This document shows, piece by piece, positions 23,285-44,761 of a DNA stretch of 64,000 nucleotides; the stretch's first letter is position 1; each line of letters starts with the position of its first letter. The notes beneath the pieces were generated by a model. It had not been told where the DNA came from and made no database searches. It worked only from the letters and a program-made list of their open reading frames with translations. The stretch lies in the NCBI GenBank assembly GCA_013239625.1, contig MU055549.1, forward strand, positions 1,116,001 to 1,180,000. Direction: 5' to 3'. A program made the position numbers and the translations under genes. This DNA comes from Lama guanicoe (taxonomy: Eukaryota).

Positions 23285-23373
23285 TTTATCAAACCGTCCT
23301 CCACATAGAGATCCGCGTGAAAGGACTGGTCATCATTGACGATCCTCCCACCTCGGATCAGAAGGCGGTCACT
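23285..23373 (-). CDS. DPYSL4: DPYSL4 exon 2 (SDRLLIRGG...DGLIK)
   Basis: aacag|AGT ... AA|gtaagt, 89 nt. Confidence 0.96.
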
Positions 23374-26079: not shown

Positions 26080-27300
26080 TAGGTTTGAATCCGCGGGCTC
26101 CCAGGCACGGTCCAGTTGGCGCCAGGCTCTCGCTTCCCTCCCTCGGCTGGGCTCCGGGCTGCCTGGAGGGGCCAGCTTTGTTTCCTGGCCGCGCAGGGCG
26201 GGCGGTCGACCTCCCCGAGCCGTGCGTGTGGGTGTTGGAGGGGGTCCGCCCGAGAGCAGGGCTGCCGAGGCGCCTGCTCAGCGGCTAGTGAGCGCTCATC
26301 TCTCCGGGGAACTCCGAACCCCGGCTCCACGGAGGGATTCGCGCCGCCAGGGGCTCCGGGCCGAGCGGCCGGGCTGAGCTGCTTTGTCTCGGACAAAGAA
26401 CTCCCGGCGCGGCGGCGGCGCGGTCTGGGGGGCGGATGGCCGGTGGGCTGCGCGGGGAAAGGCATCTCTGCGCCTCGAGGCCAGAGGAGGCTGGGCTGGC
26501 GGTGCCAACAAAGGGCCGCAGCGCCCGCCAATCCTTAAGAAGAGCTCCCAGAGAGGCCGGCCACCGCGGGCAGGGAGGCACGTCTGTGCTTTAGCAAGCA
26601 GGTCTTCCCCGCACCCGCCCTCAACCCCCGGGCTCCGCGCCCTCCCCTGGCGCAGAGGAGGTCCGGCCAAGCCGGCAGGGCCTGAGCCTGGGCCTGTGCG
26701 CGGGATCCGTAAGGCGGTGCAGCGCGGCGCTCGCGGGAGCGCGGGAAGGAGCCGGGGGAAAGGGACAGCCCTGGGACAGGGCCAAGCATGGGGGCTGGAC
26801 CTCGCGAGCAGGGGGCAGGCGCGAGGCCGGGAGGGACCTCCCCGCAGCCTGGAGGCCAGGTCCGGCCTGAGGCAGTGGGCAGGGGGCGCGGAGTGGCTGC
26901 CGGGAGCGGAGCTCACCGTGATCCGGGGGATGCTCTTCTTGCCCTGAAAAGACATCTTGCTCCTCCGGCCGGCGCCGCCGCCTCGGTCGGCCCGCGCGGC
27001 CTGGCTCAGGCGGGGCGGGCCTGGGGGTCCTCGGTAGGGGGTGCAGGAGCTGGGCCGCGCAGGGGACGCGCAGAGCCCAGGCGTGTACGTGAGGGCGCCG
27101 GGCGTCTGAGTGGGAGCGCGCTGGGCCGCGCGGCTCCGTTACCGGCCCCGCCCCCGGCTCAGCCCCGCCCCCGACCCGCAGCTGCTCCTGTTTTCAAGCC
27201 CCGCCCCGTCCGGGCTCTGCAATGGTACCCTTACCCCAGCCCTACGTCTGAGCTGCGGCCAAGGGCCTGGCCCCACTAGGACCGCGACGCAAACGCGTGC
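26080..27300. promoter_or_regulatory. CpG island / GC-box promoter of DPYSL4 short exon 1
   Basis: Dense CpG and GC boxes (gggcgg/ccgccc) around the ATG at 26955; boundaries approximate. Confidence 0.8.
26917..26955 (-). CDS. DPYSL4: DPYSL4 exon 1, short/B form (MSFQGKKSIPRIT)
   Basis: ATG at 26955; ACG|gtgagc donor. Confidence 0.96.
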
Positions 27301-27879
27301 TGGACGGGAAGGGGGAGAGGGTTGCAGAAGGTCATGACCAGTATATGTGCGGAGTTTGCAACCAGGAAGGAGGGTGGGAGAGGTCCAGCAACGTCGTGCC
27401 AGGCCCCTCTTCGCCCCTGGCCAGCCACGGATCCACCACCAGCCCCTTGGTGACCCGAGGCACCAAAGGCCACGGGGATTGAATCCAATCTCAAGTCCAG
27501 GCTTATGCGCTCCGGAAGCTGGACTCTGTCTGGAAAGATGTGTCAGGTCAAAGCCTAGCTCCTTCGAGGCTGGCCCAGGGCAGGGATTGGAACGCCAGGC
27601 TGGCCGGGGACCGGCAGTGGAGACGCCTCATTGTGAGGCTGCTCCAGGGCCAGCTCCGGGAAACTTGAGGGACAGAGGGAGGTTGGAGAGACACAGAAGG
27701 GACAGAAAGAGACCCAGAGAGACACAGAGAAAGAGACAGCTCCTCAAGGCCTGGGACGGACCAGAGAAGCAGAACCAGGGCAGGAGAGTCAGGACCTTAG
27801 GGCGGGGCCTGAGGAAGGCGGTGCATGATAGAGTTCAGGCCCAGACTCGGCCAGTCAGGGAGAGGAAGGCCCCGCCACG

Positions 27880-28620
27880 GGCCCTTGCGTCCCCTTGGAG
27901 GAGCTAGGTGGTTGTGCAAGAGTACGAGCCCCTGGTCCGTGCCCCCAGTGGCCTCCCGTCGTGGGTATTCAGCGTGTCGAGGAGTCCGGGCCCGCATCCC
28001 CCTCTCACTGGCCCCTATGCCGGCCCCTCTCTGCACTGCGACCACTACCTGCGGTTGGCCGCGGGCCTGGGCCGCGCTGGACCTCTCTGGGAGACTTGCC
28101 GCAGCCTCTGGGCCGTGTCTGTCTGGCTCGCCGGGTCCCTCCGGGTCGCCGCGCGGCCAGCTGTAGGGCTCTCCTGCTCGCGGACCCCGGCGGCCGCTTC
28201 CCAGCGCGTCCAGCTGCAGTGTCTTGTTCTCAAAAGCGTCCTCCACGCAGCGGAAGACTCCGCCGAGCTTGGGCCGGGCCCGGGGGCTGCCTGCGCCCCG
28301 CGTCCGCAGGCACGCGGGCAGAACCTCCGTGGGCTGCCGTGCTGCCATGGCGGGAGCAAGCGAGGCGCGGCCGGTCCTGCAGCCTCCTGTGGCGCGGTCT
28401 GCGGGGTGCGCGTGGCCGGGCGGACCTGGGCCTCGCACTCCCTCCCCTACCCGGCTGCATCCCCCGCCCGCACCCCCCACCCCCGGGCCCGCCGGACGTC
28501 TGCGCGGAGCCGGCGCTGTCCACGCAGCGAGTGCTGAACGCGCGGGGTCTGGGCGGAGGCAGCGCTCCCCGTCCCAGCGCCGAGGCTTGCCCTCTGGGCG
28601 GATGGGGGTTCCGACCTCCT
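27880..28620. promoter_or_regulatory. Second CpG island over the DPYSL4 long first exon
   Basis: CpG-dense block separated from the first island by a CpG-poorer gap. Confidence 0.7.
28049..28348 (-). CDS. DPYSL4: DPYSL4 alternative upstream first exon, long/A-type CRMP N-terminus (100 aa)
   Basis: gccATGG Kozak context at 28348. MAARQPTEVLPACLRTRGAGSPRARPKLGGVFRCVEDAFENKTLQLDALGSGRRG... resembles the long first exons of CRMP1/2/4. The phase-0 donor CAG|gtagtg is compatible with exon 2. Confidence 0.75.
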
Positions 28621-29489
28621 GTTCAACTTGAAGAAGTGCCGGCAGGGAGCAAGCGCTGAAGGAACCAGTCTATCTGAACTCAAGCCACATTTCCAGGCCC
28701 GTGGGCAATTCTACATCAGGCAAGGAGGTTCTGAGTCTGAAACGTTTGAGAGTTGAAAGAGAGGGGCGCGGGGTAGGGGGTAGGCGGAATGCGAGCTGCT
28801 CCTGACCACGCTCAAAAACAAGTTCAAGGTTTGGCCCTCGAGACACGGTAGGATCCTCAGCCCGCCCAGAGTCACAGGGCGATGCCATCACTCTATCCAG
28901 CTCTGAAGAGATTAGATTTTAAGGAGAACCAGCCTTTGCGTTGTTAGTACAGCCTGAATTTCAAAGCATAAGTGGGGACAATGGGAGTCAATGGGGGTCC
29001 TGGCTGGGCACAAGAACTAAGTCAGCAACCTTCTCCTCCCCTGGTCCCAGTCCTACCTCGTTTCCACTTCCCTGAAGAGATCCATCAAACAGCCTTTACT
29101 CACCTGTGTGGGGTCACTGCAAGTGAAATCTGTTGCCAAGTGTTACTCATTCGCAGAAGTTCTCTCACCGTCCTCAGCCAGCAGACGTTTCTCACCTGCT
29201 ACACAGCTACGGGCACGGGCCTCCCTGGCGGCTGACCTCAGCCAGGTGCTGCCAGTGCCTCTGACTGCAGAGCCTGCTCCCCAGGTGACCTTCCCTGACT
29301 CACCAGCCTGATGAGGCTGTGTGTGCGGCACCTGGCTCCCCCTCCCCAGCGTGCAGAAGGCCCAGGTTCCCTTTCTGGTGTGAAAGAAGAAACTGTCATT
29401 CAGCGAGTGGACACAGAACACAGAAGTGGCTAACACAGCCCGTAAGTCCAAACTTTAATACTTTGTGAGGGGGAGAATCTTTTTTAATA

Positions 29490-43843: not shown

Positions 43844-44002
43844 TCAAAGACCCCCCTTCTCCCGCTTCCTCGACGGGAGGGGGTCCGCAGAGACCAGATC
43901 CTCTTGGGTCTTCAGGGATGAGACACAGTGTCTCGTTCTGCCTCCCAGGCGCCCGCTGCTCTCCGGTCCAGCTGGAGGAAAGGGGTCCGGCTCCTCTGGG
44001 GG
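43844..44002 (-). CDS. JAKMIP3: JAKMIP3 downstream exon: 3'UTR in the TM isoform, coding (PPEEPDPFPPAGPESS...KTQEDL...GGL*) in TM-less isoforms
   Basis: Acceptor tctctgctcttccag|CCC; 52 codons open in phase 0 up to TGA. Confidence 0.6.
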   Translation of the reverse strand, partial: PPEEPDPFPPAGPESSGRLGGRTRHCVSSLKTQEDLVSADPLPSRKREKGGL

Positions 44003-44710
44003 CTGGAAGAGCAGAGACATGGGACACTCATCAGAGAGGCCCCTGGTCCAGAGGGACAGGCTGGAGGGACAAGGCCGCAGGGAAAGGACTGCTCTGCTCC
44101 CGCGGGGAGGCCCCTGGAGATGGAAGGGTGAGGTCACTCCCCACCTGTCCTCTCATCTCGTCTGGGAAGGGCGCGGTGCTCGAGCTTTCCCCTGCGGCCT
44201 CGCTCTGAGAGCCGCGGGGATGAGGCCACAGCTTAGCACAGCTGTGACATCGTGAACGAGCCCAGCTCACTGGGAAAGCGGGCATCTCTGCTGAACCTCA
44301 GGGCGACCCGAGCTTGCACGGGCTACCACGGAAAGGACAGGGAGACGCGAAACCGGCAGCTCTGCCTCCTGCGAGGTGCCCAGGGCAGAGAAACGAGCTG
44401 GCTCTGTGCGAGCACATCTCTCCCCGCGTAGGTCCCGTGGGAGGGGGTCCTGAGCCCTCCTCCCTTCTCCTGGAAGGCCAGCGCCCCTTCCGCTCTGACG
44501 ATGGCAGACCCCTCTGGGCCCCGACCCCAGGGCAGGCACTGCAGTGGCTTCGTGAGGACCTTTGGCAGCCCTGGCTGTTGCCATCCGGACGTGCCTCCTG
44601 CTTGCGGAACCGCAGGCGGCAGCTCCCCGGGCCGTGCGGGGCCCATGCGGGGCCGTGCTGGTCCCCAGGACGCAGAGAAGATACTCACCACGTCAGGGCA
44701 CCCAGGCGAG

Positions 44711-44761
44711 CTATGACCAGAGAATGAAAGCTAAGGAGAAAAATAAGAACAAAAATAGAAA
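44711..44761 (-). CDS. JAKMIP3: JAKMIP3 stop-containing exon, transmembrane tail FLFLFLFFSLAFILWS* (exon continues to a donor at 44689)
   Basis: Long pyrimidine tract then tttcag|TTT; TAG at 44713-44711; GTG|gtgagt donor 22 nt after the stop. Confidence 0.93.
   Translation of the reverse strand, partial: FLFLFLFFSLAFILWS

What the first reader, a model, noticed from the sequence alone, without database searches (positions are those of the whole stretch)
28049..28348. Intact 'long/A-type' first exon of DPYSL4 (CRMP3A-like), 1.1-1.4 kb upstream of the canonical start
Seen: on the - strand a gccATGG start opens 100 codons (MAARQPTEVLPACLRTRGAGSPRARPKLGGVFRCVEDAFENKTLQLDALGSGRRG...RGQPQ). They end at a phase-0 donor, CAG|gtagtg, inside a separate CpG island. 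Splicing to exon 2 (AGT GAC, phase 0) would give a 659-aa protein. Known (from memory): long isoforms of CRMP1, CRMP2 and CRMP4 start with an alternative exon carrying roughly LP...P.QK(Y/F)(G/C)GMF..VEG..E(N/S)KT(I/L)DFD..SVG. CRMP2A has a GSGSPKPR Cdk5/Pin1 site, mirrored here by GAGSPRAR. Inference: mammalian DPYSL4 is usually described only as the 572-aa form, so this is either an under-annotated functional CRMP3A or a diverging relic of it.
Basis: partly seen in the sequence, partly recalled or inferred. Interest (0 to 1): 0.8.

Follow-up and report, generated by a model that had tools for sequence, protein, structure and literature searches.

The report
Long-isoform first exon of DPYSL4
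The 100 codons upstream of the usual DPYSL4 (CRMP3) start are a real alternative first coding exon, related to those that give CRMP1, CRMP2 and CRMP4 their long forms; mammals have kept it in frame and several gene databases already predict it, but I found no paper on it and could not test whether it is expressed.

Summary
The minus strand of 28348-28049 holds gccATGg, 100 open codons and a CAG|gtagtg donor in phase 0. It lies in its own CpG island, 1.1-1.4 kb upstream of the canonical DPYSL4 start.

The open frame alone is not evidence: 98% of shuffles of the island give 100 or more open codons. The evidence is homology and frame retention.
- The peptide matches A-type N-termini of other CRMP genes (for example a named fish DPYSL3, E 5.5e-6).
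- It matches orthologous open frames in more than 25 mammalian sequences.
- About 12 independent indels are all in frame.
- The initiator M is present wherever it can be checked.
- A GT follows the last Q in all 19 read-through frames whose printout reaches the donor.
- A 28-residue core is 79% identical across lineages, against 34-42% for the flanks read in the same frame.

The roughly 45-residue linker evolves almost neutrally. Euarchontoglires have deleted the S-P site.

NCBI and Ensembl models in macaques, gibbons, gorilla, colobines, galago and equids already splice this exon to exon 2 as "isoform X1". Reviews still list long forms only for CRMP1, 2 and 4.

Verdict: a real fourth member of a known exon family, unstudied and of moderate interest.

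The parts
28349..28650 (-). Leader and presumed promoter part of the upstream CpG island; holds four Sp1-like GC boxes. The transcription start site is unknown.
   Evidence: GC 0.76, CpG o/e 0.85; GC boxes at 28601, 28556, 28469, 28423
28458..28460 (-). Out-of-frame upstream ATG. Its 76 codons overlap the main ATG and stop at 28230; it would act as an inhibitory uORF if it is transcribed.
28049..28348 (-). Exon 1A coding part: ATG at 28348-28346 in cccgccATGG, 100 codons, ends in phase 0.
28274..28297 (-). GAGSPRAR (residues 18-25). S21-P22 aligns with the GSGSPKPR stretch of A-type exons, which holds the Cdk5 Ser27 site of CRMP2A.
   Evidence: Alignment; site function from the literature
28193..28276 (-). 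Conserved 28-residue core RPKLGGVFRCVEDAFENKTLQLDALGSG (residues 25-52).
   Evidence: 79% mean identity between lineages, against 34-42% for the flanks; all residues invariant across the family are present
28049..28192 (-). Poorly conserved Pro/Gly/Glu-rich linker (residues 53-100), kept in frame.
28043..28048 (-). Splice donor gtagtg after CAG.
   Evidence: a V codon (GTN) follows the last Q in all 19 read-through frames printed past the donor
27250..27799 (.). CpG-poor valley separating the two islands (part of intron 1A).
26917..26955 (-). Canonical exon 1B coding part (MSFQGKKSIPRIT), which exon 1A would replace.
23285..23373 (-). Exon 2 (89 nt), the shared acceptor for both first exons.

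Best explanation
This is the DPYSL4 counterpart of the alternative 'A' first exon that gives CRMP1, CRMP2 and CRMP4 their long isoforms.

Inferred mechanism: transcription starts in the upstream CpG island and translation starts at 28348. The exon is spliced from 28049 to exon 2 at 23373, skipping the canonical 13-codon exon 1B. The product would be about 659 aa (a 'CRMP3A'): the normal dihydropyrimidinase-like body preceded by a 100-residue disordered extension.

The extension has three parts. First comes a moderately conserved N-terminal piece with an S-P site homologous to the Cdk5/Pin1/FKBP12 switch of CRMP2A. Second is a strongly conserved 28-residue linear motif shared by all A-type exons, probably a partner-binding motif. 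Third is a fast-evolving spacer whose length changes only in whole codons.

Shown here: the homology, the frame retention, donor and ATG retention, the separate island, and public models with this junction in other mammals. Inferred: use of the promoter, splicing and translation in this species, and any function of the motif.
For: -: 33 phmmer hits. P0001-P0017 are orthologous frames at 47-76% identity (the one exception, P0016, is a sturgeon A-type exon). A-type exons of other CRMP genes score E 3.2e-9 to 7e-4, and P0023 is named DPYSL3.
- pairwise E 6e-14 and 3e-12 over residues 10-70.
- the residues invariant or nearly invariant across 31 A-type exons (G18, R25, K27, G30, F32, V35, E36, A38, K42, T43) are all present here.
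- in 28 aligned mammalian exons, about 12 independent indels (3, 13, 13, 1, 2, 1, 2, 1, 4, 10, 4, 4 aa) are all in frame. The core and the terminal ..QQ|V stay in one frame in every unspliced ORF translation. With P(3n) = 1/3 per indel the chance is about 2e-6, or about 1.5e-4 counting only the 8 events seen in ORF translations that carry no gene-model bias.
- mean identity between lineages is 79% for the core and 60% for the N-terminal piece, against 42% for the leader and 34% for the post-donor read-through in the same frame.
- the initiator M is an internal ATG in all 10 frames printed with their leader, preceded by a conserved SPAPA context. The macaque, gibbon, colobine and gorilla models show the same.
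- models from Macaca fascicularis, M. nemestrina, Nomascus, Symphalangus, Rhinopithecus, Trachypithecus, Gorilla, Otolemur, Equus przewalskii and E. asinus read ...PQQ|SDRLLI.
- 77% identity to the donkey 662-aa model.
- the exon sits in its own CpG island.
- AlphaFold2 gives pLDDT 60 and no secondary structure, as expected for a disordered extension.
Against: - There is no RNA evidence.
- No dN/dS could be computed, because no orthologue DNA could be fetched.
- Between close relatives the exon is no better conserved than its leader read in the same frame: macaque-gibbon 88% against 85%, gibbon-gorilla 90% against 95%, and 86% against 75-82% in another clade. Most of the exon therefore evolves nearly neutrally.
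- Some lineages changed 4-5 core residues.
- The S-P site is deleted in Euarchontoglires-type sequences.
- An out-of-frame uATG at 28460 overlaps the start.
- One representative (P0014) lacks the N-terminal third.
- Reviews list no long CRMP3, and no paper mentions one.
- Gene models may be partly ab initio.
Confidence: 0.7

Rival explanations
1. It is a relic of an ancestral A-type exon. The exon is truly homologous to the CRMP long-isoform exons but is no longer used in this species or in most mammals. It survives because it lies in a GC-rich, stop-poor CpG island that is kept for another reason, such as a promoter or enhancer of DPYSL4.
For: The linker and even the whole exon diverge about as fast as the flanking leader between close relatives. 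GC-rich DNA keeps frames open by itself. No RNA holder was found. The literature knows only the short CRMP3. Lineage-specific core changes and loss of the S-P site appear.
Against: About twelve indels occurred and none shifts the frame, although the linker is otherwise free to change. In the intron just downstream, close relatives do show out-of-frame stretches (P0006 against P0066). The ATG and the GT donor are kept wherever they can be checked. The core is 79% identical, against 34-42% for the flanks, over roughly 100 My of separate evolution. Annotation pipelines build the junction in at least 10 species.
Confidence: 0.2
2. It is a non-coding first exon or a purely regulatory conserved element. 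The DNA is conserved as a promoter or 5'UTR, and the protein-level resemblance is a by-product.
For: The leader upstream of the ATG is also somewhat conserved (42%). The region is a CpG island with GC boxes. A uATG overlaps the start.
Against: DNA-level constraint does not explain indels occurring only in threes, or significant protein similarity to A-type exons of paralogues that split before the vertebrate radiation. It also does not explain why conservation ends at the donor.
Confidence: 0.07
3. It is a chance open frame in GC-rich DNA with no relation to CRMP long isoforms.
For: Frames of 100 codons or more occur in 98% of shuffles and on both strands here.
Against: One search gave 33 significant hits, all but one of them (P0018) orthologous exons or A-type CRMP exons. 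Named DPYSL4 models contain the exon.
Confidence: 0.01

Closest known systems
CRMP2A (long DPYSL2 isoform), N-terminal exon with the Cdk5 site Ser27 bound by Pin1/FKBP12
   Same: It is an alternative upstream first exon of about 100 codons that replaces the 13-codon B exon. The stretch ..P....G.GSP..R.K..G.F..VE...ENKT...D.L.SG. aligns at 47% identity over 47 residues, with the S-P at the same place. It is a disordered extension.
   Different: Here the motif reads RARPK rather than KPRQK, and VEDAF rather than VEGSL. The exon evolves much faster among mammals, and the S-P stretch is deleted in primates, tupaia and some unnamed lineages. No phosphorylation, Pin1 binding or expression has been shown for DPYSL4.
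L-CRMP4 / CRMP4b (TUC-4b, long DPYSL3 isoform) and LCRMP-1 (long CRMP1 isoform)
   Same: The exon architecture and core motif are the same. Identity to a named fish DPYSL3 A exon is 48% over 61 residues. The exon ends with Q|GT in phase 0, as do the mammalian read-through frames that I take, from memory, to be CRMP1A (P0028, P0086).
   Different: Those long forms are documented as 72-75 kDa proteins with known roles, namely RhoA binding and cancer-cell migration (PMC7325199). The presumed CRMP1A exon is 95% identical between a vole and another mammal, against 48-79% between lineages here.
Predicted 'dihydropyrimidinase-related protein 4 isoform X1' models (e.g. XP_005595624 Macaca fascicularis, XP_008514734 Equus przewalskii, UniRef A0A8C4M8X2 Equus asinus)
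   Same: This is the same exon with the same junction to exon 2. Identity to the equid model is 77%. The equid product is 662 aa, against 659 aa here; the difference is a 3-residue deletion in this species.
   Different: These are computational models in other species. Some start at upstream in-frame ATGs that this window lacks (721, 704 and 694 aa). None has been studied experimentally as far as the searchable literature shows.

Membership tests
A-type (long-isoform) first exon of the CRMP1-4 / DPYSL genes | Lies upstream of the canonical B first exon of a DPYSL gene, on the same strand, with its own promoter region | tested here: met
   The exon lies 1.1-1.4 kb upstream of the exon 1B CDS. 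A separate CpG island is shown, and gene identity by 13 further exon matches. Promoter activity itself was not tested.
A-type (long-isoform) first exon of the CRMP1-4 / DPYSL genes | Significant sequence similarity to the N-terminal extension of known long CRMPs, including the LP..., GSP..R.K.GG.F..VE.AFE.KT..FD.LS.G motif | tested here: met
   (E 3.2e-9 to 7e-4 to paralogous A exons); the family-invariant residues are present.
A-type (long-isoform) first exon of the CRMP1-4 / DPYSL genes | About 100 codons ending in phase 0 at a GT donor, so that it can replace exon 1B in front of exon 2 | tested here: met
   There are 100 codons ending CAG|gtagtg. Exon 1B also ends in phase 0, and exon 2 starts in phase 0 at 23373. 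The same junction appears in public models of 10 species.
A-type (long-isoform) first exon of the CRMP1-4 / DPYSL genes | Actually transcribed and spliced to exon 2 in this organism | tested here: inconclusive
A-type (long-isoform) first exon of the CRMP1-4 / DPYSL genes | Purifying selection as coding sequence | tested here: inconclusive
   The frame, ATG, donor and core are kept, but the linker is near-neutral. dN/dS could not be run because no orthologue DNA was available.
A-type (long-isoform) first exon of the CRMP1-4 / DPYSL genes | Translated into a protein of about 72-75 kDa | not testable with these tools
   Needs an isoform-specific antibody or proteomics.
CRMP2A-type Cdk5 / prolyl-isomerase switch | S-P at the position homologous to Ser27 of CRMP2A | tested here: met
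   S21-P22 aligns with the S-P of GSGSPKPR. It is absent from Euarchontoglires-type orthologues.
CRMP2A-type Cdk5 / prolyl-isomerase switch | Phosphorylation by Cdk5 and binding of Pin1/FKBP12 | not testable with these tools
   Known only for CRMP2A (bioRxiv 10.1101/2025.01.13.632804).

The most novel reading that the evidence does not exclude
All four CRMP1-4 paralogues kept the dual A/B promoter design, so a translated CRMP3A exists in most mammals. It carries the family's 28-residue motif on a rapidly evolving spacer. It keeps the CRMP2A-like Cdk5/prolyl-isomerase S-P switch in Laurasiatheria-type lineages, this species included, but lost it through a 13-residue deletion in primates and their relatives. 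That would make a natural experiment separating the motif's function from the switch. A more remote, untested idea: the unusually basic, acid-poor first 33 residues (R4, R15, R17, R23, R25, K27, R33 against E8) could contribute to the mitochondrial association reported for DPYSL4 (PMC6099896).
Probability: 0.5. Interest if true: 0.5.

Novelty: new member of a known kind. Interest (0 to 1): 0.4.

Why it matters
Reviews of the CRMP family state that only CRMP1, 2 and 4 have long isoforms, and they treat CRMP3 as a single 572-aa protein. The long forms of the other three behave differently from the short ones in axonal localisation, RhoA signalling, invasion and prolyl-isomerase control.

If CRMP3A is made, several things would need a second look: knock-outs, antibodies, expression studies and promoter-methylation assays of DPYSL4, which has two CpG islands. 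The shared 28-residue motif would also become a family-wide feature worth a binding-partner search.

The gain is limited. Annotation pipelines already predict the isoform in primates and equids, and the exon is weakly constrained.

Tried and rejected
- ORF length as evidence was rejected. Frames of 97-254 aa lie on both strands, and 98% of shuffles give 100 or more open codons.
- Pfam, PDB sequences and the ESM Atlas gave nothing for the 100 residues, as expected for a disordered extension.
- AlphaFold2 gave no fold.
- Literature searches for CRMP3A, L-CRMP3 or a DPYSL4 isoform returned nothing. PMC4662601 (Balastik 2015) is not held.
- Cluster names did not identify the unnamed Logan/ENA frames or the paralogue of the bird-like exons P0019-21. 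Their assignment to DPYSL4 rests only on the shared LPAC..GAGSPR..VEDAF.NKTL pattern.
- Codon-position GC (0.79/0.65/0.78) shows no clear coding signature.
- P0013 looks hominid and may be human, so I left it out of every alignment, script and search.
- P0002 was also kept out of further calls, although its intact 13-residue stretch argues that it is not a primate.
- P0018 is a spurious hit.

Full report
**What is in the sequence**

On the minus strand, 28348-28049 reads cccgccATGG followed by 100 open codons and ends CAG|gtagtg. The frame is closed upstream by a TAG at 28672-28670. The only in-frame ATG between that stop and 28348 (at 28690) is closed by the same stop after six codons, so 28348 is the first in-frame ATG that can open this frame.

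The canonical DPYSL4 first exon (MSFQGKKSIPRIT, 39 nt, phase 0, donor gtgagc) is at 26955-26917. Exon 2 begins at 23373 behind a pyrimidine tract and AG.

A local tblastn with a donkey DPYSL4 model maps 13 further coding segments down to about 12915 and confirms the gene.

The exon sits in its own CpG island at 27800-28650 (GC 0.73, CpG o/e 0.79). A CpG-poor valley at 27250-27799 (o/e 0.45, minimum 0.29) separates it from the canonical island at 26200-27249.

**Is it more than chance?**

The open frame is not. This DNA carries frames of 97-254 aa on both strands, and 98% of shuffles of the island give at least 100 open codons. Codon-position GC (0.79/0.65/0.78) is uninformative. Everything therefore rests on comparison with other sequences.

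**Homology**

A phmmer search of the 100 residues against 1.84 billion representatives gave 33 hits.

- P0001-P0017 are, with one exception (P0016, see below), the same exon in other mammals (47-76% identity). Most are unspliced open frames called on Logan/ENA contigs, so they read from the leader through the exon into the intron.
- P0016 and the remaining hits (except the spurious P0018) are A-type N-termini of other vertebrate CRMP genes, of the form ..DDLPVYLARPG....PRQKYGGMF.NVEGAFE.KTIDFDALSVG...
- One of them, P0023, is named DPYSL3 of Oryzias melastigma.
- Pairwise BLASTP gives E 6e-14 to that DPYSL3 exon. It gives E 3e-12 to an exon with NLGSGSPKPRQKFCGMF, which from memory is the DPYSL2A type.

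In an alignment of 31 A-type exons, every invariant or nearly invariant position is present in the window: G18, R25, K27, G30, F32, V35, E36, A38, K42 and T43. That this S-P is the isoform-specific Cdk5 site (Ser27) of CRMP2A, read by Pin1 and FKBP12, comes from the literature (bioRxiv 10.1101/2025.01.13.632804).

**Is it already annotated?**

I searched the 90%-cluster protein collection with the equid-like frame P0001, restricted to its exon part, so that full-length proteins were eligible. I then listed cluster members. This turned up public models in ten species:

- Macaca fascicularis XP_005595624 (721 aa) and M. nemestrina
- Nomascus and Symphalangus (704 aa)
- Gorilla (694 aa)
- Rhinopithecus (675 aa) and Trachypithecus (649 aa)
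- Otolemur (644 aa)
- Equus przewalskii XP_008514734 and E. asinus A0A8C4M8X2 (662 aa)

All of them read ...PQQ|SDRLLI..., which is exon 1A joined to exon 2 exactly as proposed. The window exon is 77% identical to the donkey model. Its 3-residue deletion accounts for 659 against 662 aa.

The goat (797 aa) and Tupaia (773 aa) entries read from exon A through intron into exon B; these are ab initio artefacts.

The literature does not know the isoform. [quoted passage not shown] Full-text searches for CRMP3A, L-CRMP3 or a DPYSL4 isoform found nothing.

**Is it kept as coding sequence?**

dN/dS could therefore not be computed, and I used the read-through translations instead.

(a) Frame retention. 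In an alignment of 28 mammalian exons I count about 12 independent indels, of 3, 13, 13, 1, 2, 1, 2, 1, 4, 10, 4 and 4 residues.

- Every one is a whole number of codons.
- In every unspliced frame the core motif and the terminal ..G.QQ|V lie in one frame.
- If one indel in three is a multiple of three by chance, twelve in a row has P of about 2e-6. The eight events seen in frames that carry no gene-model bias give about 1.5e-4.
- A frameshifted orthologue would still have been found through its core but would lose the ..QQVVAAG end, and none does.
- By contrast, the intron just downstream shows out-of-frame stretches even between close relatives (P0006 against P0066).

(b) Start and donor. 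The initiator M is an internal ATG in all 10 frames printed with their leader, behind a conserved ..SPAPA context; the macaque, gibbon, colobine and gorilla models show the same. In all 19 read-through frames whose printout runs past the donor, the residue after the last Q is V, which means GT.

(c) Conservation by segment. Mean identity between twelve lineages, all read in the same frame, is:

| Segment | Mean identity |
|---|---|
| Leader | 42% |
| N-terminal piece | 60% |
| 28-residue core | 79% (often 24-27 of 28) |
| Linker | 45% |
| Post-donor read-through | 34% |

Conservation thus peaks in the motif shared with the paralogues and stops at the donor.

(d) Evidence against strong constraint. 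Between close relatives the exon as a whole is no better conserved than its leader:

- macaque-gibbon, 88% against 85%
- gibbon-gorilla, 90% against 95%
- another clade, 86% against 75-82%

Some lineages changed 4-5 core residues. Euarchontoglires-type sequences share a 13-residue deletion that removes the LPACLG..GSPR stretch, including the S-P. A presumed CRMP1A exon is 95% identical between a vole and another mammal, so the DPYSL4 exon is the fast-evolving member of the family. One representative (P0014) lacks the N-terminal third, for unknown reasons.

**Structure**

AlphaFold2 with the 31-sequence alignment gives mean pLDDT 60, pTM 0.14 and no secondary structure, with the highest confidence over residues 21-40. 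Pfam, PDB and the ESM Atlas give nothing. This fits a disordered extension carrying a short linear motif.

**Expression**

Expression is untested. No RNA run holds the exon.

An out-of-frame uATG at 28460 (76 codons, overlapping the start) would tax translation if the start site lies upstream of it. Primate models do start further upstream.

**Restrictions observed**

- I did not build or search the joined spliced protein; the 659 aa is arithmetic.
- P0013 looks hominid because it shares the gorilla-type 10-residue deletion. It may be human, so I left it out of every alignment, script and search.
- No N runs occur in the window.

**Verdict**

The stretch is the true DPYSL4 member of the A-type first-exon family (about 0.97). 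It has most likely been maintained as a coding exon through mammalian evolution and yields a CRMP3A with a disordered, motif-bearing N-terminus (about 0.7). The main rival is a recently idle relic (about 0.2).

It is not new to annotation pipelines, but it is absent from the CRMP literature. I rate it a new member of a known kind, of moderate interest (0.4).

Noticed in passing
window 28458-28460 (-), frame ends at 28230: An out-of-frame upstream ATG (ggggATGc) opens 76 codons that overlap the exon 1A start codon. It may act as an inhibitory uORF, depending on where transcription starts.
   Followed up: partly
alignment (P0068-P0073, P0078, P0069, P0011, P0015, P0017): Primates, tupaia and three unnamed lineages share a 13-residue in-frame deletion. 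It removes the LPACLG..GSPR stretch and hence the S-P site homologous to CRMP2A Ser27; the core motif stays.
   Followed up: partly
P0013 (output): This is a hominid-looking representative that shares the gorilla-type 10-residue deletion. As printed, it has V where the others have the initiator M. I take it as possibly human and did not compare, align or search it.
   Followed up: no
P0001 vs P0034, and P0081 vs P0077: Equid sequences differ at four clustered linker residues (EGPGEPGG[ND]G against ERPGEPDEDG). In the two read-through frames, 40 residues of read-through on each side are identical. This is a local burst of change or a polymorphic GC-rich tract.
   Followed up: no
P0065 (goat, 797 aa), P0069 (Tupaia, 773 aa), P0023 (Oryzias DPYSL3): These public ab initio models run from the A exon through intron sequence into the B exon ATG. 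They merge two mutually exclusive first exons, which is an annotation artefact.
   Followed up: partly
P0019-P0021, P0024: These GC-rich, bird/reptile-like frames (LPACFAGLGAGSPRPRQKRGGMFCSVEDAFDNKTL..., ending ..GC.Q|V) look like non-mammalian DPYSL4 A exons.
   Followed up: partly
runs X3-X6: Four 2-Gb runs of the same organism, library type not given, hold 86-94% of the island's sampled words. That is more than low-coverage whole-genome data should hold, so they may be enriched libraries (capture, ATAC or ChIP).
   Followed up: no
window 43844-44761: Another first-stage note places JAKMIP3 exons here. That would fit the usual JAKMIP3-DPYSL4 neighbourhood; I did not check it.
   Followed up: no
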